Positions 15,845 through 37,025 of a stretch of DNA of 37,084 nt are shown here, in pieces. The notes under the pieces were generated by a model, which did not search any database, had not been told where the DNA came from, and worked only from the letters and a program-made list of their open reading frames with translations. The position numbers and the translations under genes are program-made. How positions within the stretch are numbered: the stretch's first letter is position 1; the number at the start of each line of letters is the position of its first letter. Origin of the DNA: Octopus bimaculoides (lineage: Eukaryota); NCBI RefSeq assembly GCF_001194135.2, contig NC_069000.1, positions 43,346,738 through 43,383,821 on the forward strand, read 5' to 3'.

Positions 15845-16833
15845 GAAATCTGTAGAGATAATCTTAACAAAGGATGTTATAGCACTGCTAACACAGAGGA
15901 ACACAGTATTGACTTTTAAGAAGGTTTTGTTTACTTTGTAGTATATTATGGTTGTATTACGAAATACCGTGTCCCTACAAGTGATTAATATATATATATA
16001 GAAAGAGAGAATGACAGACAGGCAGACAGACAGAGACAGACAGACGGACGGACAGATAGACTGTCTGCCCGTCCGTCAGATAGATAAATAGATAAATAGA
16101 TAGATAGATTATAGACAGTAAAGAAATAAGAAACGTTAGTACGCCGGGCGAAATGCTTAGCGGTATTTCGTCCGTCTTCACTGAAAAGTCGAGTGGGCCA
16201 GGTCAATAGTGGAAGACGGTGGAACTGGACCAGAAAACACGTGTTTTCGAATTGCGGCTCTTAAGAACATATCTATTCCTAGGTGTTAGCCAAACATGTG
16301 TGCATGCGTGTGTGTGTGTGTGTGCATGCGTGTGTGTGTGCATGCGTGTGTGTGTGCATGCGTGTGTGTGTGTGTTTGCATGCGCATAACAGTGTGTTTG
16401 TGTGTGTAAATATTATAGACTAATAGGTCAAAACGACCACAAATCGAAATAGGACACGATATGATTTATAAAAGTTTTTTTAAAAAGCGTAGAACAAATC
16501 CACTACCCCCAGCATACACCGCCATACACACACGCGCGCGCACACGCCTTTCTTTTTACAGATTTAATAATATTTTAACAAAGAATCTACATTTTCACGA
16601 TTTCACTGTTTTCACATTCCCAAAGCTGAATATTTCGAATCCAGAAACGCAGTTAACTTACTTTGGAACAATTTTTTATTCTCTTATTTGAATTCCGAAG
16701 AGATATTCTTGAAGAATTTAGCAGCGTTTTCTAAATTCAAAATACTCAGTTTTTGGTAACTTACTGAATTAACAAAAGCAAAGATTCTTTGCTGAAACAA
16801 TTCATACGTTTAAATACTTAGAACACAATTTCT

Positions 16834-17790: not shown

Positions 17791-17954
17791 ACTACGAAAG
17801 CTACAAGTAACTCTTGAAAGCTTAGCTGAGGTGCACGAGAGTTTATTGTTCTGACAGCGTTGGTTGTTGCAGTTGCTCCTAATGCTGTTCTGGCCTGCTG
17901 CTGTTACTGATGTTGCTACGGTTGTCGTTGTTTTTGCTGCTGCTGCATACCTTG

Positions 17955-19293: not shown

Positions 19294-19429
19294 ATGTCAC
19301 GTGGTTACAATGCTTTTGTTCGAGTCAGTCGGCGCTCGTTTTCTCTACCTACCAACCAGTTGACGACGACGACAATGATGATGATGATAATGATTATAAC
19401 AGTGATGATACTTCCATGCACGTCACTCA
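19294..19429 (+). CDS. Two-Ig gene copy 1, exon 1 (signal peptide MSRGYNAFVRVSRRSFSLPTNQLTTTTMMMMIMIITVMILPCTSL)
   Basis: ATG context, reading frame and phase-1 donor (A|gtaagt) are conserved in three paralogous copies. Hydrophobic core precedes a small-residue cleavage-like site. Confidence 0.7.
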
Positions 19430-20050
19430 GTAAGTTAAGATTAAAAACANNNNNNNNNNNNNNNNNNNNNNNNNNNNNNNNNNNNNNNNNNNNNNNNNNN
19501 NNNNNNNNNNNNNNNNNNNNNNNNNNNNNNNNNNNNNNNNNNNNNNNNNNNNNNNNNNNNNNNNNNNNNNNNNNNNNNNNNNNNNNNNNNNNNNNNNNNN
19601 NNNNNNNNNNNNNNNNNNNNNNNNNNNNNNNNNNNNNNNNNNNNNNNNNNNNNNNNNNNNNNNNNNNNNNNNNNNNNNNNNNNNNNNNNNNNNNNNNNNN
19701 NNNNNNNNNNNNNNNNNNNNNNNNNNNNNNNNNNNNNNNNNNNNNNNNNNNNNNNNNNNNNNNNNNNNNNNNNNNNNNNNNNNNNNNNNNNNNNNNNNNN
19801 NNNNNNNNNNNNNNNNNNNNNNNNNNNNNNNNNNNNNNNNNNNNNNNNNNNNNNNNNNNNNNNNNNNNNNNNNNNNNNNNNNNNNNNNNNNNNNNNNNNN
19901 NNNNNNNNNNNNNNNNNNNNNNNNNNNNNNNNNNNNNNNNNNNNNNNNNNNNNNNNNNNNNNNNNNNNNNNNNNNNNNNNNNNNNNNNNNNNNNNNNNNN
20001 NNNNNNNNNNNNNNNNNNNNNNNNNNNNNNNNNNNNNNNNNNNNNNNNAT

Positions 20051-20104
<54 letters not shown>

Positions 20105-20331
20105 CCATTAGAGGTAGAATCAACAAAAATGCGCTCCATCTATTGAGAGATAAATATAGATTTAATACACGACCCAAAGAGCTACTAATAGTTTCATGCT
20201 TTTATGATACTTGATCAGACAACTTTCAGGTTTCGTGTCTATAGTAGAAGCGATAATTAAATCTGTCTTTGATAAATTGTTTCCGTCCCATTTTTCGTGT
20301 ATTCATTCATTTATTTATTCCTCACTCATAG

Positions 20332-20664
20332 ATAGTGTTGAAATGACAAGCCTAACACCTTTCGACGGATTTGGGATCGATGGACCATCTCAAATGAATA
20401 TAGCATGTCGTCTTGATGCAAAAGACTTGATGTTCTTCAGACTCAGACGTAACAATGAAATCGTTGTTGATATTGGTTTCCACGAAGGTATAGGAGTTTT
20501 TGAAGTCATTCGTTCCGTGAAAGGTTTCAACTGCAACATGCCGCAATCAAGAACGACTAAAGCAGTATTAAAGTGCTGGAAAGAAAATCTGGATTGCAGT
20601 GACGTAGCATCCTATATATGTGAGATATCGAATGCAGAGAAGTCCAATTCAAGGATGCTAAGAG
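20332..20664 (+). CDS. Two-Ig gene copy 1, exon 2 (V-like Ig domain)
   Basis: Acceptor ctcatag, donor gttaat, 333 nt, phase 1-1. B-strand Cys (NIAC) and F-strand D-x-A-S-Y-x-C motif. Open in both paralogs despite about 19% nucleotide divergence. Confidence 0.82.
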
Positions 20665-20699
20665 GTTAATTTTGTTTCATCTTAGCGAAAAAATAGTAA

Positions 20700-20717
20700 C
20701 ACTACTACTACTACTAC

Positions 20718-20787
<70 letters not shown>
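20700..20787. repeat. (CTA)n/(TAA)n microsatellite; counterpart (TTA)n/(GTA)n at 30655..30740
   Basis: Direct reading. Confidence 0.9.
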
Positions 20788-20900
20788 CCAAAAGATTGTG
20801 CTAACAAGTACTGCCCTAATCCTTAGAAAAATCCTATCAGTTTAAATGTCTGTGTTGTATTACATCTCTTAAGTACGAAATAGCCCGGCTATAGAAAATG
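20786..20900 (+). mobile_element. R4/Dong-like (RLE) retroelement 3' tip next to (AAT)n
   Basis: Reads IQKIVLTSTALILRKILSV*, like the C-terminal motif of RLE elements. Confidence 0.5.
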
Positions 20901-20995
20901 AAGAATGTGAAGACAGTACCAGTGAAACACAAAGGTCGATGTAATCCACTAGTCCCCTCACGCCAAATTTCAGTTCTTTTGCCTTTGCGGAAAGG

Positions 20996-21031
<36 letters not shown>

Positions 21032-21161
21032 GTTCAGTAGTTTTATTTTTATAACGTGCTTTCACTTCACTACCGAGCGCAGCTCTGTGTGCCTTGGGTA
21101 TGTGCTGTGGTTTGCTGTGATGCTCTTATGGTTACTGTATTGAAAGTGTTTTGCGTAGGAT

Positions 21162-21206
<45 letters not shown>

Positions 21207-21745
21207 GTCTTCCTTCTTGCTCCAATTTTGTCACCTTTTTTTGCCCGACACCGACGCCAAAGAGACTCGCTATATACAGTGACTGTCCATTAAAATAGCC
21301 ATACCATATTCTTCATTTACAAATCCAAATAAAGTCATGTAAAAATATTCACATGGCAAGTAATTCTTCTCATAGCGGCAATGCACTTCTCAATACATCT
21401 GATGTACTAGGTAAGACAATTTTTTATACCCTTCTTGCAGGGATGGTAAGCCAGGGGTCATTCGCAAATAATTTTGAGTTCCTCTTTTGACCATTTCTAG
21501 TGCTCCTACAATCACTGCTATTGTAGCTGCCTTGAGATCCCACATTTTGTTTTCGATTTCAATGAGTTTCTTTAAATCATTTGCCCCAATATATGATTAA
21601 AAGGGATATTCCTGTCGATCAATGAACAGTGCTTATCAGTTTGGTCTACCCAAGAATAGCAGATTTATTAGCTTTGATGGTTCGATCAATATGCACCAGA
21701 GCGTCCAAATAATCGCTACATTCGCTCGCCCAGTTATATCCCTAT
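21207..21745 (-). mobile_element. R4/Dong-like (RLE) retroelement 3' fragment ending in (TAA)n
   Basis: Frameshifted pieces VHIDRTIKANKS, DKHCSLIDRNIP, MWDLKAATIAVIVGALEMV and KKIVLPSTSDVLRSAL* match the RLE consensus. Confidence 0.65.
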
Positions 21746-21938
21746 TCTAGTGTTGCTATAGTTATAACATAGATTAGTTGAAGCCCTGGAAACCGTAAAG
21801 ATATTGCATAGTAACATGTCATTTATTTTGAGCAATGTTCAACTTTTTCGTTTTATACCAACATTACAATTTGTGTCAAAGCATCCATCCAGTATGTTAT
21901 TTTGAATCTTATTGTCTTAAAATACATTTCCTCTACAG

Positions 21939-22268
21939 TGAAATCTTTTGTCAAAAGTCTTGACCATATTAATCCACCTTTTGAAAAGAAGGGGAATAAG
22001 AAGGTGTCTACCTTCAGATGTTTGGCATATGTTTCACCAGATACTCACAAAAGTGTCACCTTTAAATGGACTGTAAAACATAAGACTGAAAACGCTAAAC
22101 CAAAGATGACAAGCAAGAGAGTGCTTTTTCCGACAACTGACCAACATTGCATACCGATACAGTCGCTATATCAACACTCGTTAACTGACAAAGACGAGTC
22201 TGGGACGATTATCACATGTTCAGCATTTGGCAGCATACTTACAAAAGAAGTGAATATCATCGGTGCAA
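21939..22268 (+). CDS. Two-Ig gene copy 1, exon 3 (second Ig-like domain)
   Basis: Acceptor tttcctctacag, donor gtgagc, 330 nt, phase 1-1. Ig pattern FRC...FKW...ITC. The indel versus copy 2 is exactly one codon. Confidence 0.8.
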
Positions 22269-22321
22269 GTGAGCAAATATTCTTTTTCTTACATATCTTT
22301 ATTATCCTTATTTTCTTTAAA

Positions 22322-22625
22322 GGCAATGGTGTTGCTCTGTGGAAATACGTTTGCTTCCCAACGACATCCTTCACGACTCAGTCCCACTGCATGGCACCTT
22401 GGGCAAGTTTCTTTTATTCTAGCTCCAGCTCGACCAAAACCTTATGAGTAGATCTGATAGACGGAAACCGAAATAAGCCCGTCGTAAGAAGACCGACAGT
22501 ATGTAAAGCAGGTTTTAAACAATAAGTATTGGAGAAGATTTCTTCGACTGAACTCCACAAGTTTGTGTCCCACCTTGGCTGCAGTCCAATGACTGAATCA
22601 AGTAAAATTTAAAAGAAATAAAGAT
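22322..22625 (+). mobile_element. SINE family B in intron 3 of Ig copy 1
   Basis: cagtcccactgcatggcaccttgggcaag...gacggaaaccgaaataagcccgtcg...gctgcagtccaatgactgaatcaagtaaa. Orthologous position to 31742..32065. Confidence 0.7.
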
Positions 22626-22699
22626 ATAGGTAGCAATCACTTCTACATCGTCTCGAAACCACATTACACGGCATCAGGCCACAGGAAGACTCTCATCAA

Positions 22700-22940
22700 A
22701 CGACACCTCAAACATCACATCAGACATCATATCAAACATCAAATCAAACATCACATCAAAGTACACCACGCATCGTACATCATATAAAACAACGTATCAA
22801 ACATCACGACAAAACACATCAAACTTCATATTACATATCATACAGAACATCGCATCAAACACCACATCAAACATCATATCAAACATCACATCAAACATCA
22901 CATCAAACATCACATTAAACATCACATTATAGATCATATC
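22700..22940. repeat. 12-nt minisatellite (aaacatcacatc)n in intron 3 of copy 1, running into a gap
   Basis: Direct reading. Paralogous array at 32150..32335. Confidence 0.85.
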
Positions 22941-24049
22941 NNNNNNNNNNNNNNNNNNNNNNNNNNNNNNNNNNNNNNNNNNNNNNNNNNNNNNNNNNNN
23001 NNNNNNNNNNNNNNNNNNNNNNNNNNNNNNNNNNNNNNNNNNNNNNNNNNNNNNNNNNNNNNNNNNNNNNNNNNNNNNNNNNNNNNNNNNNNNNNNNNNN
23101 NNNNNNNNNNNNNNNNNNNNNNNNNNNNNNNNNNNNNNNNNNNNNNNNNNNNNNNNNNNNNNNNNNNNNNNNNNNNNNNNNNNNNNNNNNNNNNNNNNNN
23201 NNNNNNNNNNNNNNNNNNNNNNNNNNNNNNNNNNNNNNNNNNNNNNNNNNNNNNNNNNNNNNNNNNNNNNNNNNNNNNNNNNNNNNNNNNNNNNNNNNNN
23301 NNNNNNNNNNNNNNNNNNNNNNNNNNNNNNNNNNNNNNNNNNNNNNNNNNNNNNNNNNNNNNNNNNNNNNNNNNNNNNNNNNNNNNNNNNNNNNNNNNNN
23401 NNNNNNNNNNNNNNNNNNNNNNNNNNNNNNNNNNNNNNNNNNNNNNNNNNNNNNNNNNNNNNNNNNNNNNNNNNNNNNNNNNNNNNNNNNNNNNNNNNNN
23501 NNNNNNNNNNNNNNNNNNNNNNNNNNNNNNNNNNNNNNNNNNNNNNNNNNNNNNNNNNNNNNNNNNNNNNNNNNNNNNNNNNNNNNNNNNNNNNNNNNNN
23601 NNNNNNNNNNNNNNNNNNNNNNNNNNNNNNNNNNNNNNNNNNNNNNNNNNNNNNNNNNNNNNNNNNNNNNNNNNNNNNNNNNNNNNNNNNNNNNNNNNNN
23701 NNNNNNNNNNNNNNNNNNTGGACAAGAACGCAAAGCATCCAGAGCGTTAGGTGATACAAAAAAGGGATAACAAAACATCCAAACAGACGATACAAAGAAA
23801 ACAAGGACGGGTCATTCGGAGTTTTCTTTCCTCGGTCGAGTTCCAGATTATCCTTGCAATTTCGGCTGGTTATACTCGATATATATATATATATCAGAAT
23901 AGAGGGGCATTGTCAAACCAGGCAGAATATTTATTAATGTGTCTCTTAATACATATACGGAAGTCTAGCAAAAGAATTTGGGGGGTTGATATGTCTCCAG
24001 GTAATACTAATGTGAGATCCGAAGCAGAAGTTCATCATCGGTGACTTAT

Positions 24050-24288
24050 GATATTTTATTTGTTTATTGCCCACAGGGGGCTAGACATAGAGGGGACAAA
24101 CAAGGACAAACAAAGGACTAAGTCGGTTACATCGATCCCAGTGTGTAACTGGTACTTATGTAATCGACCCCGAAAGGATGAAACGCAGAGTCGACCTCTG
24201 CGGAATTTGAACTCAGAACGTAACGGCAGACGAAATACCGCCAAGCATTTCGCCCGGCATCCTAACGACTCTGCCAGCTTGCGGCGAC
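24050..24288 (-). mobile_element. SINE family A copy specific to unit 1
   Basis: ctggtacttatgtaatcgaccccgaaaggatg...gaatttgaactcagaacg...ctctgccagct. Confidence 0.75.
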
Positions 24289-24738
24289 TTATAATATTAT
24301 TGTTAGATAGGTGCCATTCATCAATTAGCAGGCACGAGTCTGCTAATTAATGAATGGTACATACATACATTCATTTACTATTTTCAGCCATACAGCTACA
24401 GTCAATGTGAAGCACGGAAACCGTTAGACTCTGGAGCTATGTGTATATATATATATATATATATGACTACTTTAAGTTTCTGTTAACTTTTAACAAGGCA
24501 TTGGTCGGTCCGAGATTACAATAGGGGGCAATTGCTCAATAAGAATGATTAAAATGGTGTTCGTTTTTCTCTAATTTTTTCATATATATTTCTATGGTTA
24601 CAGGTATATTCGTTGTTTAGTGACAATGGATGTGGGCAAGATTCATCCAATCGGAAAAGAAAGGTCCCAGAAAATATTTAGGAAAGTAAGTAAATGATAA
24701 TAATAGAAATGGAAAACTCAATTTATTACAAAATTTGA

Positions 24739-24744
24739 AATAAA
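24739..24744 (+). promoter_or_regulatory. Putative polyadenylation signal of Ig gene copy 1
   Basis: AATAAA inside a tract nearly identical to 32930..33140. Confidence 0.3.
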
Positions 24745-24886
24745 AATTAAAAAACTGGAACGTTGTGTCCTTAATTAAAATGTATTGTTGTATTAAAATT
24801 TACCCCGTTTCTCACGTACGTAAATATATGCATGTATATATGTATATATGTGGTCCTATAAATGTAAGTATATGTGTGTGTTTATG

Positions 24887-24932
<46 letters not shown>

Positions 24933-25067
24933 TGTATTTATGTGCGGGTATGTAAGTATACATGTGTGTGTCTATATATGTGTGTCTGTGAGTCTATGTC
25001 TATATATGTTTGTCTGTGCGTATATATACACGTGTATATTTCTGTGTGTATGTGGGTGGGGTGAGTT

Positions 25068-26526
25068 TGGTCAGGTAAAGCTCCTGGATTGGATGGTATT
25101 CCAGTTGAAATTCTGAAGGCATGTGGGGATCATATTTCATCTGAAATTCATAACCTGGTAACTCGAGTTTGGAATGAATCTTCTGTGCCACAAGAATGGA
25201 TAAATGGCATTCGAATCTCTGTATACAAGTGTAAGGGCCCGAAAGCAGTCTGTGGTAGTTCTAGAGGGATAACTCTTCTGTCACATACCACGAAGATACT
25301 TTCAAGGATCATGTTAGATCGTCTTGTTGAGAATGTGTCCACATGTGATTCCTGAAGAACAGTGGGTTTTCAGACCTGACCGAGGAACAAAGAACATGAT
25401 ATTTTCTGTGAGGCATGTTCAAGACAAATGCTTAGAGGAACAATTGCCACTATACCAGGTCGTCATAGATTTAACTAAGGCATTTGACACGGTAAAAAGG
25501 GAGGCACTATGGATTGTTTTGTGTAAATGTGGTTGTAAAACACATTTTGTGAGCATCGTTAAGGAACTACTCAGAAACATGAAATCTCAGGTAGTCTTTA
25601 ATGGTGAGGTATCTCATGAATTTTCGGTGGACAATGGTGTCAAACAGGGAGATATTCCTGGCCCTACACTTTTTCTATTTATTTTGCTGCATTACTTTGG
25701 TATGCTTTCAAGGATTGCAACAGGGGAATCGGAATCAGATTTCGGACATCTGGTCAGTCGTATTTTTTATTTGACCCAGTTTAACTGCAAAGCAAAGACT
25801 TTCAAAATGTTTGTTAGAGATGATAATGATTTGATGGCACACCCAGAGGAGGATATGCAACATTTAATGGACAGATTTTCCACTGCATGTGTACATTTTG
25901 GACTCACAATTAGTTTGGGGAAAACCAAAGTTATGTTTACTCACGTGCCAAGACAAACATATTCTGAACCGAACATTTTTGTGAATGGAACAACGTTAGA
26001 AGTCGTTGACACCTTTGTTTACCTAGGAAGCACACTATCAAGAGCTGGTTGTCTTGATGCAGAAATACACTATCGAATAGGGAAAGCTCGAAAAGCGAGT
26101 ATGGGTGGACAGGGGTATTTCCCTCCAGACAAAAATCAGTGTCTAAAAAGCATGTGTGTTGTCTGCACTTCTTTATTCAAGTGAGACATGGATCACTTAC
26201 AAGCGTCATATAAAAATGCTGGAGAGCTTTCATCAAAAGTGCTTCAGGACTCAAGTGGGAATGTTTCATACCAGATACGAGGTTTTGCGCATGGCACTTT
26301 GCAGCTCAATTGAACAACTTGTTATCTTGGCTCAAATGAAATAGACTGGACATGTTATTAGAATGAAAGACGAGTGTTTGCCAAAGCATCTTTTTCATGG
26401 TGAGCTCAATTCTGGTAAGCGACCGCAACATAAACCGAAGGAAAGGGATAAAAAGTGCGTGAAGGAAAACCTGAAGAAGCTAGATAGGAGGAAAAGTGAT
26501 TGAGAAAATGATGCTCTAGATCGGAA
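25068..26526 (+). mobile_element. RTE-clade LINE reverse transcriptase fragment, truncated at both ends, unit 1 only
   Basis: KAPGLDGIPVEILK, RGITLLS, DLTKAFDTV, GVKQG..PGPTLF, HFGLTISLGKTKVM, FVYLGS and W.GHVIRM..ECLPK.LFHGEL, with frameshifts. Confidence 0.92.
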
Positions 26527-26918
26527 TATATACTAGTCAGTGTAGTGGGGGGAGGGTGCTTATCGAAAGATTTTAAGGGGTGCATGTATTAATTTTTATA
26601 TAGACAGATAGATAAAGCGGTGAAGAATAGCAGATAGCATGTGCTGTCGTTCTTTCAGTGACCACCAACGATGGCCAGAGTTGGCAAAAGTGAAGGGGCA
26701 GAACATCCTCTATAATTCTATAATTTATTCGGTCATGAAACTACGTAACGCGTACATACATATATATATGACGGATTTTCACTCAGCTTCCGTCGAGAAG
26801 GATTTAGTAGGGCGCAGGTCTATAATGGAAGACACTTGCCCAAAGTGCTGCACGATTGCAAATTGATCCTCTTATGATCACATCCATACCTACGCGTTAC
26901 ATAAGCATGTGTGTTTTG

Positions 26919-26993
<75 letters not shown>

Positions 26994-27721
26994 ATTATAG
27001 ACTGATAGATCTGAGCGACCACAAATCGAAATAGGACACGATATGATCTATAAAAGTTGAAGAAAAATGTAGAACAAATCCACACCTAACACATACCACC
27101 ACGCACATACACATAAACAAACACACACACATACACACACGCACACTCACATTCGCACACATACAGATACGCACTTTTATTTACAGATTTAATGATATTT
27201 TGGCAAAGATCCTCCGTTGACACGATCTCACTGCTTAACTTTCCCGAAGCTAAATGTTTCGAATGCAGACACGCGGTGAATTTACTTTGGAATAATTTTG
27301 AGAATAGTTCTTTCCAATCATGTAAATTCCAAAGGAGATATTCTTGAAGAATTTAGCAGCGTTTTCTAAATTCAAAATACTCAGTTTTCGTAAATTGTTG
27401 AATTAACAAAAGCAGAGATTCTTTGCTGACAAATAATATATGAGTGTATGCATATATACGTACATGTATGTACATATCTTCATCTACATGTATATATAGA
27501 TGCATATCTGGGTACAAGACGTTGCAAACAAAACGTTGACAAAATGATAAACAGAGTACAGAAAACACACAGGCCACATAGAGAACATTTCCTTCATCAG
27601 CTGCCACCATTCTAAAACTAAGCGTAAGTGTCTTCTTTGTTGCCTTAACATCAGAATAGTGAAAGTAAAGGTAAATATATAAACTGTGTTGTTTTTTTCT
27701 CTTTCTTACGCCTTCAAAACC

Positions 27722-27881
27722 TTTATTACCTCCACCTTCGCTAAAGCGGAGGTACTGTTTAGAGACGTGTTTGTTTGTTTGTCTGTGGACGAGATATCTC
27801 AAGAACCGATGGATGGATTTGGATGAAAATTCCAGGAATGTTTAGCCTCGCGACTGGCACGAACTGACTAGATTTTGAGAT
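27722..27881. mobile_element. Possible non-autonomous Helentron/HINE-like element end
   Basis: ttattacctcc...ggaggt hairpin, then gtttgtttgtttgtctgt and gatggatttggatgaaaatt, a layout recalled from DINE/HINE-like repeats. Cut by a gap. Confidence 0.4.
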
Positions 27882-28744
27882 NNNNNNNNNNNNNNNNNNN
27901 NNNNNNNNNNNNNNNNNNNNNNNNNNNNNNNNNNNNNNNNNNNNNNNNNNNNNNNNNNNNNNNNNNNNNNNNNNNNNNNNNNNNNNNNNNNNNNNNNNNN
28001 NNNNNNNNNNNNNNNNNNNNNNNNNNNNNNNNNNNNNNNNNNNNNNNNNNNNNNNNNNNNNNNNNNNNNNNNNNNNNNNNNNNNNNNNNNNNNNNNNNNN
28101 NNNNNNNNNNNNNNNNNNNNNNNNNNNNNNNNNNNNNNNNNNNNNNNNNNNNNNNNNNNNNNNNNNNNNNNNNNNNNNNNNNNNNNNNNNNNNNNNNNNN
28201 NNNNNNNNNNNNNNNNNNNNNNNNNNNNNNNNNNNNNNNNNNNNNNNNNNNNNNNNNNNNNNNNNNNNNNNNNNNNNNNNNNNNNNNNNNNNNNNNNNNN
28301 NNNNNNNNNNNNNNNNNNNNNNNNNNNNNNNNNNNNNNNNNNNNNNNNNNNNNNNNNNNNNNNNNNNNNNNNNNNNNNNNNNNNNNNNNNNNNNNNNNNN
28401 NNNNNNNNNNNNNNNNNNNNNNNNNNNNNNNNNNNNNNNNNNNNNNNNNNNNNNNNNNNNNNNNNNNNNNNNNNNNNNNNNNNNNNNNNNNNNNNNNNNN
28501 NNNNNNNNNNNNNNNNNNNNNNNNNNNNNNNNNNNNNNNNNNNNNNNNNNNNNNNNNNNNNNNNNNNNNATATATATATATATATATATATATATACTGG
28601 ATAGATATACTGGATAGATACTATCCCTTAGTGGGTTGAACCCCCAACCCCTAACTCTCTCACGTTATATATATATATACGTGAGTGAGTGTGTGTGTGC
28701 GTGTGTATGTGGTTGTGTGTGTGTAGACACAGACATCTCAACAT

Positions 28745-29525
28745 TAAATGAACACCTTGATGTTTGAAAGCTTTAATTATCCATAGATCACTTCGTTTAA
28801 TATTTCCTAACCGAAGAAGAGGTTTCCTTCCTGCTATAGTAGCCATGTTGGTGGACATACTTCACAGAAGTACTCCGACTCACTTGGACTGGCTCTACAT
28901 CATTTGCCTGACAACGAGCATTGTTTTTAGTAAACCACCTAACAGCCCAAAGACTGCTTCGTCTCAGTGGCGTACCCTTAGCCCCAACATTCGTCAACGG
29001 AGAGGATCCTCGACATGAAGGGCGGATCATCAGCGGCAAGCTGACAGAGACCTTGACTGACCTCAACACGATGTTCGTTCTGTTCAGTTATCAGCAGCCA
29101 GTGGACAAACTAAGCAGAGACATGCCGCATGTTTCTATTCAGACGTTCCGATTGCCTGTACGGACCCATACGACAGGCCAACAGCATTAACAATGTCGTT
29201 GATAGTCCTCTGACGATCCTCGTACACAAGCTGATGAATTTTCGCCACATTTCCGAGGTTGACGCTCGTGGCAATCTTCCTGATCGCTCATCCTCTTCCA
29301 GAGAGGATCTTTCGATTTTGAAGCGTCTGCGCCTTACGATACGTTGCGCACAACCCACTGCCCCATGGTCGTAAGCTTGTCGAAGTATGTTCAATGTCTC
29401 TGTAGTAAACTTTCCAGGTTTAACGCTAAATTTTACATTGACTCTTTGTTCCAACTTCCTGTCTATGACAAAATCGCAGACTACAGTACACACATGATCA
29501 CAAAAAACACAAATTTTCACACTTT
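28745..29525 (-). mobile_element. Mariner transposon remnant, unit 2
   Basis: KLEQRVNVKFSVKPGK...EEDERSGR, continuing NMRHVSA*FVHWLL...DDPPFMSRILSVDECWG*GYATETKQ (first catalytic D region), with stops. Confidence 0.85.
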
Positions 29526-29950
29526 AGTAGCTCTACTTTGTATCGTTTGCAAACTGATATGTTCTACGATCATTAAAGTGCAACGACCTCCACAATAACC
29601 AGCCTTCAATTTGGTTTTCCGTTCCTAGGTTAATCGGAAACGTAGATTGCAGTGCTACTCATAAACCTTCTCGCTAGTTCAGTTATTTGGTGGGAAAATG
29701 CCACCAAAGCAACTTAAACCGTCCAAAAGGACAGGTTCATCTTCTAGTCCTTTATAAAAGCTAATTTTAAAATATTTTTCTCATTTCCGATGAGACTTTT
29801 TTTATGATTATTATTATTTTTCCTGTTTTGCTTATTTTGCTCCTTTTCATTAATTAACTAATTATTTTTATCACTAATTAGTTTCATCACATTTCGACAA
29901 GAAAAACTATTGCCAAATTTGTTCTAATTCATATTTGACCTGGATCAAAT

Positions 29951-30104
29951 ATGTCACGTGGTTACAGTGCTTTTGTTCGTGGTAGTTGGCGCTCGTTTTC
30001 TCTACCTGCGAACTTGTTGACAACGACGACGACGATGACGACGATGATGATGATGATGATGATGATGATTATAACAGTGATGATATTCCCGTGCACCTCA
30101 CTCA
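29951..30104 (+). CDS. Two-Ig gene copy 2, exon 1 (signal peptide with T5MT2M8 run)
   Basis: Paralogous to 19294..19429. Donor A|gtaagt. A 127-nt intron leads in frame to exon 2. Confidence 0.75.
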
Positions 30105-30231
30105 GTAAGTTAAGATTAAAAACAATAAATTTATTTCTTCAAGCTTTTCTTTCTCTCGCCTCTTTCAACAACTCTCTCGCACTTATACTGTCTTTTCATT
30201 GTTCGTCCATTTATTTATTCCTCCCTCATAG

Positions 30232-30564
30232 ATCGTGTTGAAATGACAAGCCTAACGCCTTTCGAGGGATTTAGCATCACTGGACCAACGAGAATGGAAA
30301 TAACATGTCGCTTTGAAGCCAAAAACTTAGGCTTCTTCAGACTCAGACGTAACGATGAAGTCATTGTTGATATTGGTTTCCACGAAGGTGTGGGAGTTTT
30401 TGAAGTCATTCATGCCGTGAAAGATTTCGGCTGCACCTTACCGCGAGCTGCAACGACGAGAGGTGAATTGTACTGCTGGAAAAATAACCTAGATTGCAGT
30501 GATGTAGCATCTTATACATGTGAGATATCGAATGCAAACGAGTCGAATTCAAGGTTTCTGAAAG
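30232..30564 (+). CDS. Two-Ig gene copy 2, exon 2 (V-like Ig domain)
   Basis: Acceptor ccctcatag, donor gttaat, 333 nt, phase 1-1. ITC...DVASYTC motifs. 76/111 aa identical to copy 1 (hand count). Confidence 0.85.
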
Positions 30565-30655
30565 GTTAATTTTGTTTCAGATCTTCAGATCTTCCATCTT
30601 GTTTCGTCAAATCTGTCGCAATACCTGCATTTAGGGGTCAAAACTGTTTTATTAA

Positions 30656-30741
<86 letters not shown>

Positions 30742-31188
30742 AAGCGGTGAGATTGTACACCCTTTAATACGCCGAGCAAAATGCTTACCGGTATTTCGAT
30801 CGTCCGTACATTTTGGGGTTGAAATACCGTCGAGGTAGATTTGTCGTTTTCCTATCGGGGTTGATAAAATGAGTGCCACTTGAGTACTGGGGTCGATGTT
30901 AGCGAGTATCGCCCTCCCCCACTATAAATTTCAGGCCTTGTACCTTTAGTAGAAAGGATTATTATCATTATTATTAGGGCAGTGAGCTGGCAGAATCGTT
31001 AGCGAGTCAGGAATAATGCTTAACGGCATTTCATCCATCCTTACGTTCTGAGTTCAAATCCCACCAGGGTCGACTTTGCATTTAATCCTTTCGGGGTTGA
31101 TGAATTAAGTACCAGTGAAACACTGGGGTCGATCTAATCCACTGGCTCCCAAACATTGTCGGGCCTTGTGCCTAGAGTAGAAAAAAAA
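30742..31188 (+). mobile_element. Two tandem SINE family A copies in intron 2 of Ig copy 2
   Basis: An older copy at about 30742..30960 and a younger copy at 30977..31188 (gagctggcagaatcgttagc...gggccttgtgcctagagtagaaaaaaaa). Confidence 0.75.
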
Positions 31189-31375
31189 GTGTTGCTATAG
31201 TTATAACATAAATTAGTTGAAGCCCTGTAAATCGCAAACATTTCACAGTAGCATCTCAGACAGTTTGAGTGATATTCTATGTTCTAGTTTTCTATCAACA
31301 TTGAAATTTGTATCAATATATCCATAAAGTATGATATTTTGAATCTTATTGCCCTAAAATACATTTTCTCTGCAG

Positions 31376-31702
31376 TGAAATCTTTTGTCAAAAGTCTTAA
31401 AAATATCGATCTACCTTCTGAGAAGAAGAAAAATAAGGTGTCTACATTCAGGTGTTTGGCATATGTTTCACCAGCTACACACGACTCTGTCACCTTTAGA
31501 TGGACTCTAAAACATAAGACTGAAAACGCTAAACCAAAGATGACAGACAACAAAGTGACTCTTCCGAAAACTGGCCAACGCTGCATAGCAGTGCAGTCGC
31601 TGCATCGACACACCTTAACCGACAAAGATGACACTGGAACAATTATCTCATGTTCAGCATTTGGCAGGACACTTTCAAAACAAGTGAATATCTTCGGTGC
31701 AA
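31376..31702 (+). CDS. Two-Ig gene copy 2, exon 3 (second Ig-like domain)
   Basis: Acceptor ttttctctgcag, donor gtgagc, 327 nt, phase 1-1. FRC...FRW...ISC pattern. About 71% aa identity to copy 1. Confidence 0.82.
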
Positions 31703-31741
31703 GTGAGCAAATATCCTTTTTTCGTATCCTTATTTTCTTTA

Positions 31742-32065
31742 AAGGCAATGGCGTTGCTCTGTGAGAATACGTTTGCTTCCCAACCACATCTTTCACGACT
31801 CAGTCCCACTGCATGGCACCTTGAGTAAGCATCTTCTATTCTAGTCCCGGGTTGAACAAAGCCTTATGAACAGATCTGATAGACGGAAACTGAAAGAAGC
31901 CTTTCGTAAATCCTCATGATATATCGGTTCGAGAAAAGAAGACGGAGAGTATGAGTAGGTTTTAAAGCATTGGGGACGATTTGCTTGACTGAACTCATTA
32001 AGTCGGTGCCCCATCTTGGCTGCAGTTCAATGACTGAATCAAGTAAAATTTAAAAGGAAAAAAGA
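31742..32065 (+). mobile_element. SINE family B in intron 3 of Ig copy 2 (predates the duplication)
   Basis: Same position after exon 3 and near-collinear with 22322..22625. Confidence 0.7.
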
Positions 32066-32149
32066 TATGGGCAGCAATCGCTGCTACATCGTCTCAAAAC
32101 CACATTACAGGGCATCAGGCCAAAGAAAGAACCTCATCAATCCACATTT

Positions 32150-32335
32150 CAAACATCACATCAGACATCACATCAAACATCACATCAATCCACGTATAGT
32201 ACATCATATCAAACATCACATCAAACATCACATCAAACATCACATCAAAACATACCAAACAACACATCAAGCCACACGACAAACATATGAAACCAGACAT
32301 TAAATTTCAAACCAAACAAGACATCACATCAAACT
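32150..32335. repeat. 12-nt minisatellite (aaacatcacatc)n in intron 3 of copy 2
   Basis: Direct reading. Confidence 0.85.
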
Positions 32336-32498
32336 GAAAGTATGAAAGCCTATTGGTGATAAGAATAAATGTGAATTCAGTTTCTTTGTCAGACACTAAA
32401 TCTCCTGCTTTGATGCACCAAATATTATTCCAAACTCCATGNNNNNNNNNNATGCACCAAATATTATTCCAAACTCCATGATTTTTTTGTCTTTGCAG

Positions 32499-32593
32499 AA
32501 TCTAGCAGCACCATTTCTGCTCTACCAGATACGACATGGCTTTCTGTCTCCAAACTTTCTTTTCTCTTTCTGGTTCTTGCAAGTTGCCGCTAG
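32499..32593 (+). CDS. Two-Ig gene copy 2, putative last exon (KSSSTISALPDTTWLSVSKLSFLFLVLASCR*), GPI-signal-like
   Basis: Strong acceptor ttttttgtctttgcag. The phase-1 reading required by exon 3 gives a Ser cluster, polar spacer, short hydrophobic tail and TAG at 32591-32593. Total spliced CDS is 909 nt (302 aa + stop). Confidence 0.6.
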
Positions 32594-33047
32594 CATCATC
32601 CCGTTTTTACTCAAGGATTATAAGGAAGGTTTGTTTTCCCATCTTATTACTTCATATCTCGCTTCTCCAATCATGTTGTTTTTTTGTTTTTTTTATCAGT
32701 TTACGCACTTACCACACAGCTTCTTATTACAAAGTCATGCCTATATATATTGACTTCTTTCAGCTTCTGTTTACTTAATAATCATTGATAAGGCTTTGAT
32801 TGGGCCGAGACTACAATAGGAGGTATTTGCTCAGTAAGAATGATTAAAATAGCATTCGTTTTCTTCTAACTTCTTCGTATATATTTCTTTGGTTACAGGT
32901 ACATTGGTTCTTTAGTGCTCGTAGGATTTTGACAATGGATGTGGGCAAGATTCATCCAATCGGAAAAGAAAAGTTCCAGAAAATATTTAGGAAAGTAAGT
33001 AAATGATAATAATAGAAATGGAAAACTCAATTTATTACAAAATTTGA

Positions 33048-33053
33048 AATAAA
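33048..33053 (+). promoter_or_regulatory. Putative polyadenylation signal of Ig gene copy 2
   Basis: AATAAA about 455 nt after the stop, followed by GT-rich cgttgtgtcc. Conserved in unit 1 at 24739..24744. Confidence 0.35.
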
Positions 33054-33287
33054 AAATTTGAAAACTGGAACGTTGTGTCCTTAATTAAAATGTTTTATTG
33101 TATTAAAAATTTATCCCGTTTCTCACGTACGTAAATGTATGCATGTATATATGTATATATGTGTTCGTATAAATGTGAGTGAGTATATGCATGTGTTTAT
33201 GTCTGTATATATGTGTATGTGTGTGTGTGTGTCTATGTATGTGTATGTATCCGTATATATGTATGCATGTGGACACACGCATATATA

Positions 33288-33326
<39 letters not shown>

Positions 33327-33341
33327 NNNNNNNNNNNNNNN

Positions 33342-33404
<63 letters not shown>

Positions 33405-33676
33405 AGCTGGTAAAAAAGCGAGAGAGAAAAGGGGAGAGAGAAAGATTAATGTAAAATGGTCATAGAAGTGTCAAAAAGAGTGACTATCGACAATCGGAGA
33501 TGTTAGTATATTCCAGTTTGTCGAAAGTGAAGAAAGGATCAGAATAAAACAGGCATGCGTTAATTAGTTCCATGATAGAATAAATAATAGATATATAGGT
33601 AAAATCCATTAGCAGTTTCAAACGAGAATGTTTGATGAGAATCCATGGCGCGGAATTTTGAACGTCCGAATTCCAA

Positions 33677-33847
33677 TTTAGTAGTAGAGTAGATATTTAG
33701 TAGTAGAGTAGATATTTAGTAGTAGAGTAGATATTTAGTAGTAGAGTAGATATTTAGTAGTAGAGTACATATTTAGTAGTAGAGTACATATTTAGTAGTA
33801 GAGTACATATTTAGTAGTATAGTAGATATTTAGTAGTAGAGTAGATA
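33677..33847. repeat. 19-nt minisatellite (tttagtagtagagtagata) x9
   Basis: Nine head-to-tail units with few variants (gagtacata, tagtatag). Confidence 0.92.
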
Positions 33848-35267
33848 TATACTAGTCACTATAGTGGGGAGTTGCTTATCGAAAGATTTTAAGGGCTGCA
33901 TGTATTAATTTATATATAGACAGAGAGATAAAGCGGTGAAGAATAGCAGATAGCATGTGCTGTCGTTCTTTCAGTGACCACCAACGATGGCCAGAGTTGG
34001 CAAAAGTGAAGGGGCAGAACATCCTCTATAATTCTATAATTTATTCGGTCATGGAACTACGTAACACATACATACATATATATATGACGGATTTTCACTC
34101 AGCTTCCGTCGAGAAGGATTTAGTAGGGCGCAGGTCTATAATGGAAGACACTTGCCCAAAGTGCTGCACGGTGAAACTGAACCTGAAAACATCCGGTTGC
34201 AAATTGAATCTCTAAAGATTACATCTATGCCTACGCGATAGCCAAACATGCCCGTTCGTTTTTGTATGTGTGTATGTGTGTGCGCGCGTATGTATGTATG
34301 TGTGTGCGCGTGTGTGTGTGTGTATGTGTGTAGTAATATTATAGACGAATAGATCAGAGTAACCACAAATCGAAATAGGAGACGATAGGATTTATGAAAG
34401 TTAAAGAAAAGCATGAAACAAATCCATTCCAACAACACACACCGCTACACGCGCGCGCAAACACTAACACACACGTTCTTTTTACAGAATTGATAATATT
34501 TTAGCAAAGAATGTCACTGTTTCACTTTCCCGAAGCTAAATGTTTCGAATCCAGACACGCGGTGAACGTACTTTGGAATAATTTTCAGAATAGTTCTTTC
34601 CAATCATGTAAATTCCAAAGGAGATATTCTTGAAGAATTTAGCAGCGTTTTCTAAATTCAAAATACTCAGTTTTCGTAAATTGTTGAATTAACAAAAGCA
34701 GAGATTCTTTGCTGAAACATTAAATATTTAGAACACAATTTCTTCTTTTAATATATATATATATATATATGAGTGTATATATATATGAGTGTATATATGT
34801 ATGACGATAAAAGCATCTTCTGTGTTGCTCCTGGTAAGGTCTTACTTAACATCGGAATAGTAAAAGTGAAGNNNNNNNNNNNNNNNNNNNNNNNNNNNNN
34901 NNNNNNNNNNNNNNNNNNNNNNNNNNNNNNNNNNNNNNNNNNNNNNNNNNNNNNNNNNNNNNNNNNNNNNNNNNNNNNNNNNNNNNNNNNNNNNNNNNNN
35001 NNNNNNNNNNNNNNNNNNNNNNNNNNNNNNNNNNNNNNNNNNNNNNNNNNNNNNNNNNNNNNNNNNNNNNNNNNNNNNNNNNNNNNNNNNNNNNNNNNNN
35101 NNNNNNNNNNNNNNNNNNNNNNNNNNNNNNNNNNNNNNNNNNNNNNNNNNNNNNNNNNNNNNNNNNNNNNNNNNNNNNNNNNNNNNNNNNNNNNNNNNNN
35201 NNNNNNNNNNNNNNNNNNNNNNNNNNNNNNNNNNNNNNNNATATATATATATATACATATATATATC

Positions 35268-35444: not shown

Positions 35445-35605
35445 AAAATCACGAATTTCACAGTTTGCGAAGTAAACACAGCAATGTCACTTGGCACACT
35501 GCCTCATGAAGGTCACTACTAGCCCCCACTGCACGCGCAATCGTGTGCAAACATCTGTTAGCGCACTACAGGACTAGTCCCGGAATTTCTTGATTACACG
35601 TCGTA
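35445..35605 (-). mobile_element. Mariner TIR and 5' leader remnant, unit 3
   Basis: ctagtcccggaatttcttgattacacgtcg|ta with the same downstream flank (cacttccaaagg...) as 18434 and 18711. Confidence 0.7.
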
Positions 35606-36886: not shown

Positions 36887-37025
36887 ATGTCACGTGGTTA
36901 CAATGCTTTTGTTCGGGGCAGTCGGCACCCGTTTTCTCTACCAACCAACCTGTTGACGACAACGACGATAATGATGATGATGATAATGATTATAACAGTG
37001 ATGATATTTCCGTGCACCTCACACA
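36887..37025 (+). CDS. Two-Ig gene copy 3, exon 1 (MSRGYNAFVRGSRHPFSLPTNLLTTTTIMMMMIMIITVMIFPCTSH); rest of gene outside the window
   Basis: Paralogous to exon 1 of copies 1 and 2, with the same ATG context and A|gtaagt donor. Confidence 0.7.

What the first reader, a model, noticed from the sequence alone, without database searches (positions are those of the whole stretch)
20332..34170. Ig exons diverge far more than some non-coding tracts of the same duplication
Hand counts: the V-like exons differ at about 64/333 nt, with 35 amino-acid-changing codons versus 12 synonymous-only codons. Changes cluster in GFGIDGPSQMNIACRLDAKDLM and RSVKGFNCNMPQSRTTKAVLK. In contrast, non-coding 26611..26854 vs 33927..34170 differ at 3/244 nt, and 27283..27429 vs 34569..34715 at 1/147 nt. 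Inference: patchy gene conversion or recent unequal crossover homogenises flanks while the ligand-facing domains are kept different, as in immune or self-recognition receptor arrays. My rough dN/dS is below 1 overall (about 0.7), so positive selection would be site-specific.
Basis: partly seen in the sequence, partly recalled or inferred. Interest (0 to 1): 0.75.

Follow-up and report, generated by a model that had tools for sequence, protein, structure and literature searches.

The report
Octopus two-Ig gene array, patchy conversion
The window holds a tandem array of uncharacterised octopus genes for small two-Ig-domain surface proteins; their exons change about as fast as junk DNA, with some sites apparently under positive selection, while a few short tracts between the genes are kept nearly identical by gene conversion or by being a conserved alternative last exon.

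Summary
The window is Octopus bimaculoides. It holds three tandem genes (A, B and the start of C). Each has a signal-peptide exon, two phase 1-1 Ig-like exons and a GPI-signal-like last exon.

The anomaly lies in the tracts, not the exons. A-B exon identity (0.81-0.84) equals that of ordinary introns and flanks (0.80-0.85).

Each unit has an O. sinensis ortholog, and a shared LINE fossil ties A to S2. So the duplication predates speciation.

- **Tract 1:** A-B identity is 99%, but both copies are 90% identical to S2 and only 80% to S3, so this is post-speciation gene conversion.
- **Tract 2:** it is not simply non-coding. A 44-nt core is invariant in seven copies from two species. The core contains an alternative terminal coding exon annotated in O. 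sinensis (…KFSSVF*), which would give a form without the GPI signal.

My own codon site models give ω≈1 overall.

Nothing shows that the exons are protected from conversion. An immune or self-recognition role is untested.

Verdict: a new member of a known kind, of moderate interest.

The parts
19294..19429 (+). Gene A, exon 1 CDS. It encodes the signal-peptide-like leader with a coding (ACG)n(ATG)n run. The donor is CA|gtaagt, phase 1.
   Evidence: tblastn of P0001; sequence; annotated gene start in L001.
20332..20664 (+). Gene A, Ig-like exon 1 (V-like), 333 nt, phase 1-1.
   Evidence: Matches P0001 residues 45-156. Predicted beta sandwich.
21939..22268 (+). Gene A, Ig-like exon 2 (C2-like; Cys…Trp…Cys), 330 nt, phase 1-1.
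   Evidence: 100% to P0001 residues 157-266.
22941..23718 (.). Assembly gap in A's intron 3. A's own GPI-signal exon is expected here.
   Evidence: B's exon lies 796 nt after Ig2, and A has only 672 nt before the gap. No homolog is found in A's sequenced part. Units C, S1, S2, S3 and S5 each have their own copy.
24621..24852 (+). Tract T3, copy A. 3'UTR-like, contains AATAAA. 95% identical to copy B and 87-91% to O. sinensis.
25065..26181 (+). LINE reverse-transcriptase fossil. It is present only in A's tail and in the tail of O. sinensis S2.
   Evidence: Pfam RVT_1, E = 2.8e-16. Single collinear match at L004 30134-30763, 88.8%.
26557..26852 (+). Tract T1, copy A. Gene-conversion tract and apparent donor type.
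27238..27429 (+). Tract T2, copy A. The invariant 44-nt core is 27341-27384. The alternative terminal CDS (ag|AA TTT AGC AGC GTT TTC TAA) is 27350-27369.
29951..30104 (+). Gene B, exon 1 CDS (leader).
30232..30564 (+). Gene B, Ig-like exon 1.
31376..31702 (+). Gene B, Ig-like exon 2 (327 nt).
32499..32593 (+). Gene B, last exon CDS. It encodes KSSSTISALPDTTWLSVSKLSFLFLVLASCR plus stop, which looks like a GPI-attachment signal. The NCBI model also uses it for isoform X2 of unit A.
32452..32554 (+). B-C high-identity tract. 102 of 103 nt match unit C at L001 31405-31507. It covers the acceptor and the 5' half of the last exon, and assembly gaps bound it on both sides.
32930..33163 (+). Tract T3, copy B.
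33873..34168 (+). Tract T1, copy B. This is the converted copy: it is S2-like, not S3-like.
34524..34715 (+). Tract T2, copy B. Core 34627-34670; alternative terminal CDS 34636-34655.
36887..37025 (+). Gene C, exon 1 CDS (leader). The rest of C lies beyond the window: half of Ig1, Ig2 and part of the last exon are seen in L001.
16691..16795 (+). T2 copy upstream of the first gene ('tail 0'). Core 16706-16749. 92.5% identical to copy A.

Best explanation
**What it is.** The region is part of a tandem array in Octopus bimaculoides, directly downstream of a soluble guanylate cyclase gene. The genes belong to an uncharacterised family so far seen only in octopods. Each gene has four parts:
- a signal-peptide exon;
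- two phase 1-1 exons of about 330 nt that fold as Ig-like beta sandwiches (V-like, then C2-like);
- a short last exon that looks like a GPI-attachment signal.

**Age of the duplication.** Units A, B and C were duplicated before the O. bimaculoides / O. sinensis split (shown). Their default state is therefore about 18-22% divergence everywhere, and the Ig exons simply share it.

**How the exons evolve.** They change at roughly the neutral rate (ω≈1). About a third of codons are conserved framework. About a fifth have ω≈3, mostly in predicted loops and mostly in Ig2. This rests on my own implementation of the codon models, and recombination is a caveat.

**Why some tracts are near-identical.** Two different causes apply.
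- T1 is a gene-conversion tract of about 300 bp, copied from the A type into B after speciation (shown by phylogenetic incongruence). T3 and the B-C last-exon tract probably have the same cause.
- T2 holds a deeply conserved element: an alternative terminal exon that ends the protein with …KFSSVF* in place of the GPI signal. That would give a secreted form (annotated in O. sinensis; its use in O. bimaculoides is inferred). T2 is also homogenised between A and B.

**Why conversion falls where it does (inferred).** Conversion needs long perfect homology. Conserved elements such as T2 and T3 supply it. The fast-diverging exons do not: their longest identical run is 38 nt. So no selection against conversion in the exons needs to be invoked.
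For: **Identity and gene structure.** 100% protein match to O. bimaculoides LOC106878953; the locus is CM046620.1:43356031-43389330.

**Fold.** The AlphaFold2 model has two beta sandwiches with core pLDDT of 70-87. The top Foldseek PDB hits are NTB-A (SLAM family) and Fab chains, E = 8e-6.

**Family.** About 40 clusters at 50% identity. The nine named members at E ≤ 1e-10 are from Octopus or Argonauta; a tenth, weak hit (E = 4e-5) is from a bivalve.

**Orthology.** Exon identities are B-S3 0.89 and 0.85, C-S5 0.90 and 0.84, and A-S1/S2 0.80-0.85, against A-B 0.81 and 0.84. A LINE fossil is shared only by the A and S2 tails.

**Exons at intron level.**

**Tract significance.**

**Conversion.** In T1, A-B is 99%, while A-S2 and B-S2 are both 90% and A-S3 and B-S3 both 80%. 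In the blocks between T1 and T2, A-S2 is 80-89% and B-S3 81-89%, but A-B only 73-79%. The gapless long-read O. sinensis assembly has its own homogenised patches: S2-S3 is 97% next to a block at 73%, and the tail-0 and S1 tails are 96-98% alike.

**T2.** The 44-nt core is invariant in 7 copies. The CDS of O. sinensis isoform X2 (P0004, …GAKFSSVF) ends exactly at the core's TAA, at L004 46480.

**Selection.**
- M0 ω = 0.98.
- M1a vs M2a 2ΔlnL = 26.2, and M8a vs M8 25.7.
- Other codon-frequency models give 23.9-29.9.
- Dropping any unit gives 11.5-26.7.
- Nine null simulations give 0-8.1.
- Only 6 of 21 candidate sites lie in predicted strands, against 53% of all positions.
Against: - The window is a gap-rich short-read assembly. 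Cross-paralog mis-assembly of short tracts cannot be excluded without reads. The B-C tract is bounded by gaps on both sides.
- No Pfam Ig model reaches its threshold for any family member, and the structure model is only of moderate confidence (mean pLDDT 57).
- T2 also sits 2.2-2.9 kb (4.0 kb in one O. sinensis unit) upstream of every next gene, including the first gene, which has no Ig gene before it. It could therefore be a cis-regulatory element of the downstream gene rather than a 3' exon.
- The site-model tests use only 7 sequences and my own code. Gene conversion within exons can inflate such tests. The Ig1 result alone (2ΔlnL = 6.6) is inside the simulated null range.
- Use of the alternative exon, GPI anchoring and signal-peptide cleavage are all inferred from sequence.
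Confidence: 0.7

Rival explanations
1. Assembly artefact. The near-identical tracts were produced when reads from one paralog were used to build or fill both copies in the draft Illumina assembly.
For: The window has 13 N runs. The 10-N gap at 32442-32451 is an unmerged 29-nt overlap, which shows imperfect contig joining. The B-C tract is bounded by gaps on both sides.
Against: T1 and T2 lie inside contigs, with T2 at least 150 nt and T1 more than 500 nt from the nearest N run. They keep 1-6 private differences and have diverged sequence on both sides. The same kind of mosaic is seen between neighbouring units in the gapless O. sinensis long-read assembly.
Confidence: 0.1
2. Purifying selection alone. 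All the high-identity tracts are functional elements (exons, UTRs or enhancers) and no gene conversion is involved.
For: The T2 core is invariant in 7 copies from two species and overlaps an annotated exon. T3 is 87-94% identical across species and looks like a 3'UTR end with AATAAA.
Against: T1 is only 80-90% identical between species, which is the neutral level (the LINE fossil is 88.8%). Yet it is 99% identical between A and B, and B's copy resembles the ortholog of A rather than its own ortholog. Outside the core, T2 has 1 A-B difference, against 10-14 differences from the best-matching O. sinensis copies over the whole 147 nt.
Confidence: 0.1
3. Young transposable-element insertions landed independently in both units.
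For: The last 55 nt or so of T1 resemble a dispersed SINE-like repeat (75-83% matches elsewhere). The region is rich in TE fossils.
Against: T1, T2 and T3 occur in the same order in every tail of both species, at 80-94% identity. Apart from the SINE-like piece, no other copies exist in the roughly 140 kb examined. There are no terminal repeats or target-site duplications.
Confidence: 0.03
4. Variable-cassette / shared-constant-exon locus, as in clustered protocadherins or UGT1A. Units A and B would be alternative 5' cassettes that splice to one shared terminal exon, so that only the cassettes need to differ.
For: NCBI annotates A and B as isoforms X2 and X1 of one gene sharing the last exon at 32499-32593. 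The O. sinensis model joins the S2 leader to the S3 Ig exons. The alternative exon in T2 shows that 3'-end choice exists.
Against: Units C, S1, S3 and S5 each have their own last exon, and S2 has a frameshifted one. A's expected last exon falls inside the gap at 22941-23718. The shared-exon model is therefore most simply a consequence of the gap.
Confidence: 0.1

Closest known systems
CD2/SLAM-family receptors (e.g. NTB-A/SLAMF6, GPI-anchored CD48, and CD58 with GPI and transmembrane splice forms)
   Same: The ectodomain has two Ig domains, V-like then C2-like. NTB-A is the best structural match. Membrane attachment is by a GPI-type C-terminal signal, with an alternative 3' exon that changes the anchoring. 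The genes are clustered.
   Different: There is no detectable sequence homology. The family is so far seen only in octopods. Ig1 lacks the canonical strand-C Trp. Binding partners are unknown.
Rapidly evolving vertebrate Ig-receptor arrays (KIR/LILR, CEACAM/PSG, SIRP)
   Same: They are tandem paralog arrays. Their Ig domains show ω near or above 1 with site-specific positive selection. Short non-allelic gene-conversion tracts give a mosaic of concerted and divergent evolution. CEACAMs include GPI-linked members.
   Different: This array is in a different phylum and of independent origin. The conversion tracts detected here are mainly intergenic or in the last exon, not in the ligand-binding exons. 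No ligand or immune function is known.
Mollusc FREPs (Biomphalaria) and amphioxus VCBPs
   Same: They are invertebrate Ig-domain proteins that are secreted or surface-bound, multigene and highly diversified. For FREPs, gene conversion and point mutation have been proposed as the diversifying mechanisms (my own knowledge).
   Different: There is no fibrinogen domain (as in FREPs) or chitin-binding domain (as in VCBPs). None was found in the window ORFs or in the full-length proteins. Somatic diversification was not tested.
Hydractinia Alr allorecognition complex
   Same: It is a large tandem cluster of lineage-specific, highly divergent V-like Ig genes that standard HMMs miss and structure prediction recognises (my own knowledge).
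   Different: Alr proteins are transmembrane proteins with cytoplasmic tails, whereas these have a short GPI-like tail. Octopuses are not colonial, so allorecognition is not an obvious role.

Membership tests
Immunoglobulin superfamily (Ig-like domain) | Two-sheet Greek-key beta-sandwich fold | tested here: met
   The AlphaFold2 model has two all-beta domains with core pLDDT 70-87 (mean 57). Foldseek against PDB gives 198 hits at E ≤ 1e-3; all 50 listed matches are to Ig-domain chains (NTB-A, Fab chains, a TCR chain). Confidence is moderate only.
Immunoglobulin superfamily (Ig-like domain) | Conserved Cys(B)…Trp(C)…D-x-G/A-x-Y-x-Cys(F) pattern | tested here: met
   Ig2 has FRC…TFKW…DESGTIITC. 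Ig1 has IACR…DVASYICE, but F/R stands in place of the strand-C Trp. The Cys and Trp columns are invariant in 5 proteins.
Immunoglobulin superfamily (Ig-like domain) | Significant match to a curated Ig HMM (Pfam V-set, I-set, C2-set or Ig) | tested here: not met
   The best hits are V-set_2 at E = 0.032, Ig_2 at 0.017 and C2-set_2 at 0.03, all below the gathering scores. The profile search against PDB sequences finds only titin Ig at E = 0.005.
Immunoglobulin superfamily (Ig-like domain) | One domain per symmetric phase 1-1 exon of about 300-340 nt | tested here: met
   The exons are 333 and 330/327 nt, both phase 1-1 with AG/GT boundaries.
GPI-anchored protein | N-terminal signal peptide, plus a C-terminal signal made of small ω-site residues, a polar spacer and a hydrophobic tail, with no cytoplasmic domain | tested here: inconclusive
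   By inspection, the leader is …MMMMIMIITVMILPCTSL and the C-terminus is KSSS-TISALPDTTW-LSVSKLSFLFLVLASCR. More distant family members end in similar tails. No dedicated predictor or biochemical test was available.
Non-allelic (ectopic) gene conversion tract | A segment of excess identity between paralogs, flanked by diverged sequence and beyond chance | tested here: met
   Segment scores are 242, 156 and 144, against a permutation maximum of 54. Identical runs are 129, 128 and 100 nt, against a maximum of 53.
Non-allelic (ectopic) gene conversion tract | Phylogenetic incongruence: paralogs group by species inside the tract and by orthology outside it | tested here: met
   T1 is compared with the blocks between T1 and T2. 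Orthology is fixed independently by the exon distances and by the shared LINE fossil. For T2 and T3 the signal is weaker, because those tracts are also conserved across species.
Diversifying (positive) selection on receptor domains | A class of codons with ω>1 supported by likelihood-ratio tests | tested here: met
   2ΔlnL for M1a vs M2a is 26.2 overall, 25.2 for Ig2 and 6.6 for Ig1. The result is robust, and null simulations give at most 8.1. Caveats: own code, 7 sequences, recombination not modelled.
Variable-cassette / constant-exon cluster (protocadherin- or UGT1A-like) | Many alternative 5' cassettes and a single shared set of 3' exons | tested here: not met
   Units B, C, S1, S2, S3 and S5 each carry their own last-exon copy. 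Only unit A lacks one, and that is where an assembly gap lies.

The most novel reading that the evidence does not exclude
The array may be a cephalopod-specific recognition-receptor system. Neighbouring genes would encode hypervariable two-Ig surface proteins under diversifying selection. Each could switch between a GPI-anchored and a secreted form through the ultra-conserved alternative last exon. Exons might also be joined across units, as both species' gene models suggest, which would give combinatorial products. If so, this would be an invertebrate counterpart of variable immune or cell-identity receptors in an animal group where none is known.
Probability: 0.1. Interest if true: 0.8.

Novelty: new member of a known kind. 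Interest (0 to 1): 0.45.

Why it matters
No diversified recognition receptors are known in cephalopods. Their lineage-specific gene expansions (protocadherins, zinc fingers, GPCRs) are thought to underlie their novelties.

This family has not been described: a literature search found nothing, and every member is annotated as 'uncharacterized' or 'hypothetical'. Standard domain models miss it, and it evolves at or above the neutral rate with signs of positive selection in loops. That makes it a concrete candidate for expression and binding studies.

There is also a methodological lesson. 'Exons more diverged than flanks' can arise entirely from short conversion tracts and hidden conserved exons in the flanks. 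A cross-species orthology test separates the two causes.

Tried and rejected
- **Pfam on exon translations and nine family proteins:** no Ig model reached its threshold.
- **Profile search against PDB sequences:** only titin Ig at E = 0.005.
- **Rfam on the whole window:** no match.
- **RNA folding of T2:** z = -0.71, so there is no evidence for a structured RNA. An 8-bp palindrome (GAATTTAG…CTAAATTC) in the core was seen by eye only.
- **Young-TE hypothesis:** rejected, because the tracts are collinear in all tails of both species.
- **Haplotigs placed in tandem:** rejected. A and B are only 80% identical, and each has its own ortholog.
- **A 'unit 0' Ig gene upstream of A:** none found in sequenced DNA. 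Only the tail element is present.
- **Exact look-up of P0004:** failed because only the longest isoform is indexed. This was solved through its cluster mate P0006.
- **First guess at O. sinensis coordinates for T3:** wrong. Redone by BLAST.
- **Literature searches for the locus or family:** nothing relevant.
only marginal.

Full report
**1. What the window is**

The sequence is a gap-rich draft eukaryotic scaffold with 38% G+C, 13 N runs, many microsatellites and transposon fossils.

A conceptual protein built from the finding's exons matches Octopus bimaculoides LOC106878953 at 100%. The window equals GCA_001194135.2 CM046620.1 around 43.36 Mb. L001 coordinates equal window coordinates minus 9293.

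The upstream neighbour is a soluble guanylate cyclase, with HNOBA at 9852-10217 and the cyclase domain at 11372-11794. The same neighbour is found in O. sinensis.

**2. Gene anatomy**

A self-comparison shows a tandem repeat of a gene unit.

- Unit A has a leader CDS at 19294-19429, Ig-like exon 1 at 20332-20664 and Ig-like exon 2 at 21939-22268.
- Unit B has a leader at 29951-30104, exon 1 at 30232-30564, exon 2 at 31376-31702 and a last exon at 32499-32593.
- Unit C starts at 36887 and continues beyond the window. L001 shows half of its Ig1, its Ig2 and part of its last exon.

Both Ig-like exons are symmetric phase 1-1 and about 330 nt long.

The last exon encodes KSSSTISALPDTTWLSVSKLSFLFLVLASCR. 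That is small residues, a polar spacer and a short hydrophobic end with no cytoplasmic tail. I read it as a GPI-attachment signal, which is an inference from the sequence.

No Pfam Ig model reaches its threshold. An AlphaFold2 model has two beta sandwiches with core pLDDT of 70-87 and a mean of 57. Its best PDB matches are the V+C2 receptor NTB-A and Fab chains, at E = 8e-6.

The Cys…Trp…Cys and D-x-x-x-Y/I-x-C motifs are present and invariant.

A full HMM scan finds about 40 clusters at 50% identity. The nine named members at E ≤ 1e-10 are from Octopus or Argonauta; a tenth, weak hit (E = 4e-5) is from a bivalve. More distant members keep the same architecture of two domains plus a hydrophobic tail.

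**3. The gaps (tested first, as asked)**

No compared exon or tract spans an N run.

- The 10-N gap at 32442-32451 is flanked by the same 29-mer on both sides. It is an unmerged contig overlap in intron 3, 47 nt before B's last exon.
- 33327-33341 separates two microsatellites.
- 27882-28569 is intergenic.
- 22941-23718 lies exactly where unit A's own last exon should be.

That last point matters for the annotation. NCBI joins A's exons to B's last exon and calls the result 'isoform X2'. Units C, S1, S3 and S5 each have their own last exon, and S2 has a frameshifted one. The shared-exon model is therefore most simply an effect of the gap.

**4. The observation**

- 64 of 333 nt differ;
- 35 codons are non-synonymous and 12 synonymous only;
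- dN/dS is 0.68;
- the tracts differ at 3/244 and 1/147.

In a 3333-column A-B alignment, the identical runs of 129, 128 and 100 nt far exceed the maximum of 53 seen in 5000 column permutations.

Three maximal segments stand out:

| Tract | Copy A | Copy B | Differing columns |
|---|---|---|---|
| T1 | 26557-26852 | 33873-34168 | 6/296 |
| T2 | 27238-27429 | 34524-34715 | 4/192 |
| T3 (unreported) | 24621-24852 | 32930-33163 | 10/234 |

The contrast comes from the tracts, not the exons. A-B identity is 0.808 for Ig1 and 0.84 for Ig2. It is 0.82 in intron 2, 0.80 in intron 3 and 0.85 in the 3' flank.

**5. Age of the duplication**

O. sinensis has a gapless long-read assembly (loci L002-L004). 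It carries units S1, S2, S3, S4 and S5.

| Comparison | Ig1 identity | Ig2 identity |
|---|---|---|
| B-S3 | 0.89 | 0.86 |
| C-S5 | 0.90 | 0.84 |
| A-S1 / A-S2 | 0.85 | 0.80-0.84 |
| A-B | 0.81 | 0.84 |

A LINE reverse-transcriptase fossil in A's tail (25071-25704) has one collinear counterpart, in S2's tail (L004 30134-30763, 88.8%). It has none in the B or S3 tails.

The A/B duplication therefore predates the species split. About 11% is a usable neutral yardstick between the two species.

**6. What the tracts are**

*T1.* I aligned the seven intergenic 'tails' from both species and measured identity block by block.
- In the blocks between T1 and T2, A's tail is closest to S2's (80-89%) and B's to S3's (81-89%). 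A-B is only 73-79%.
- Inside T1, A-B is 99%. Both copies are 90% identical to S2 and 80% to S3.
- So B's copy has been overwritten by the A type after speciation. This is gene conversion, and it is short, with diverged sequence on both sides.
- T1 is not conserved above the neutral level across species, so no function need be invoked.

O. sinensis shows its own homogenised patches. S2-S3 is 97% over 133 nt next to a block at 73%. The tail-0 and S1 tails are 96-98% alike. This argues against an artefact of the O. bimaculoides assembly.

*T2.* This tract is different.
- A 44-nt core (TTCTTGAAGAATTTAGCAGCGTTTTCTAAATTCAAAATACTCAG) is invariant in all seven copies of both species.
- It contains ag|AA TTT AGC AGC GTT TTC TAA. 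Spliced to the phase-1 donor of Ig2, this reads K-F-S-S-V-F-stop.
- O. sinensis LOC118766832 isoform X2 (P0004) ends …GAKFSSVF. Its annotated CDS ends exactly at that TAA, at L004 46480.
- T2 therefore holds a conserved alternative last exon that would remove the GPI signal. It has also been homogenised between A and B: over the whole 147 nt they differ at 1 position, against 10-14 differences from the best-matching O. sinensis copies, even though the 44-nt core is invariant in all copies.

One caveat applies to T2. A copy lies 2.2-2.9 kb (4.0 kb in one O. sinensis unit) upstream of every next leader, including the first gene, which has no Ig gene before it. A role as a cis element of the downstream gene is therefore not excluded.

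*T3 and the B-C tract.*
- T3 lies about 340 nt after B's stop codon, contains AATAAA, and is 87-94% identical across species and 95% between A and B. It is probably the end of the 3'UTR, with mild homogenisation.
- A further tract links B and C: 102 of 103 nt are identical across the acceptor and the first half of the last exon, against 87% to their orthologs. Gaps bound it on both sides.

Neither Rfam nor RNA folding supports a structured RNA.

**7. How the exons evolve**

Between orthologs, the exons are no better conserved than the introns or the LINE fossil. B-S3 identity is 0.892 for Ig1 and 0.850 for Ig2, against introns at 0.84-0.90. A-S2 Ig2 is only 0.79-0.80.

I wrote a Goldman-Yang codon-model implementation and applied it to seven units and 224 codons.
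- M0 gives ω = 0.98 overall, 0.75 for Ig1 and 1.33 for Ig2.
- M1a vs M2a gives 2ΔlnL = 26.2. M7 vs M8 gives 28.5, and M8a vs M8 gives 25.7.
- About 31% of codons have ω≈0.14, 47% are neutral and 21% have ω≈3.

The result survives several checks:
- other codon-frequency models give 23.9-29.9;
- dropping any unit gives 11.5-26.7;
- nine simulations under M1a give 0-8.1.

Ig1 alone (6.6) is not convincing, whereas Ig2 alone (25.2) is.

Of 21 candidate sites with naive posterior above 0.8, only 6 lie in predicted strands, against 53% of all positions.

Caveats: this is my own code, only seven sequences were used, and recombination is not modelled.

**8. Mechanism and verdict**

- Shown: an old tandem array whose default divergence is shared by exons and introns.
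- Shown: short post-speciation conversion tracts in the intergenic tails and the last exon.
- Shown: a deeply conserved element that coincides with an annotated alternative last exon.
- Supported with caveats: site-specific positive selection, mainly in Ig2 loops.
- Inferred: conversion starts where long perfect homology persists (conserved elements). It rarely starts in the fast-evolving exons, whose longest identical run is 38 nt. No selection 'keeping the exons different' is needed.

With three or four tracts, and Ig exons making up about 20% of alignable sequence, missing the exons is expected by chance.

An immune or self-recognition function remains speculation.

The pattern is the classic one for fast-evolving Ig-receptor arrays (KIR/LILR, CEACAM, FREP-like systems). 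Here it appears in a family that has not been described and is so far seen only in octopods; the literature searches found nothing on it.

Noticed in passing
window 9852-13629; L002 20150-20282: The upstream gene is a soluble guanylate cyclase (HNOBA and cyclase domains). In O. sinensis its last coding exon lies downstream of Ig gene S1. S1 therefore sits inside the cyclase's last intron there, whereas in O. bimaculoides the cyclase ends before the array.
   Followed up: partly
window 19294-32593; L004 10001-46480: NCBI gene models in both species join exons across units. In O. bimaculoides, A's exons are joined to B's last exon. In O. sinensis, the S2 leader is joined to the S3 Ig exons. These joins could be annotation artefacts or real cross-unit splicing.
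   Followed up: partly
window 19360-19400, 30035-30070, 36960-37000: The signal-peptide exon contains a coding (ACG)n(ATG)n microsatellite. The Thr/Met run it encodes differs in length between units and species.
   Followed up: no
window 32499-32510 vs 27350-27361: The 5' end of the GPI-signal exon (AATCTAGCAGC) closely resembles the start of the alternative exon in T2 (AATTTAGCAGC). T2 may descend from a duplicated last exon.
   Followed up: no
window 32442-32451: The 10-N gap is flanked on both sides by the identical 29-mer ATGCACCAAATATTATTCCAAACTCCATG. This is a false gap with an artificial duplication.
   Followed up: yes
window 17882-18286 (-), 29113-29523 (-), 35445-35767: Mariner/Mos1-like transposase fossils (HTH_48) lie in each intergenic tail between T2 and the next leader. 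They are 72-82% identical to one another, so the insertion predates the unit duplication.
   Followed up: partly
window 5336-5508, 13138-13263, 22331-22486, 31752-31913; also 6017-6179, 9627-9833, 10434-10615, 24112-24279, 30779-31187: Two dispersed SINE-like repeat families are present at 72-89% identity. One copy sits just after Ig exon 2 in both A and B.
   Followed up: no
L004 about 19422-19609: The last-exon homolog of O. sinensis unit S2 is split between two reading frames (a frameshift). This is either a pseudogenised exon or a long-read indel error.
   Followed up: no
window 7000-7950: A purine-rich, strongly strand-skewed low-complexity tract is present (GC skew 0.60, AT skew 0.32).
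   Followed up: no
window 22630-22929 and 32054-32300: A minisatellite of short A/C-rich units lies in intron 3 of both A and B. A stretch of about 100 nt in unit C's intron 3 (L001 31150-31250) is nearly identical to a stretch of unit A; I did not locate the matching A sequence.
   Followed up: no
window 27350-27374: A perfect 8-bp palindrome, GAATTTAG-(9 nt)-CTAAATTC, lies inside the invariant T2 core.
   Followed up: no
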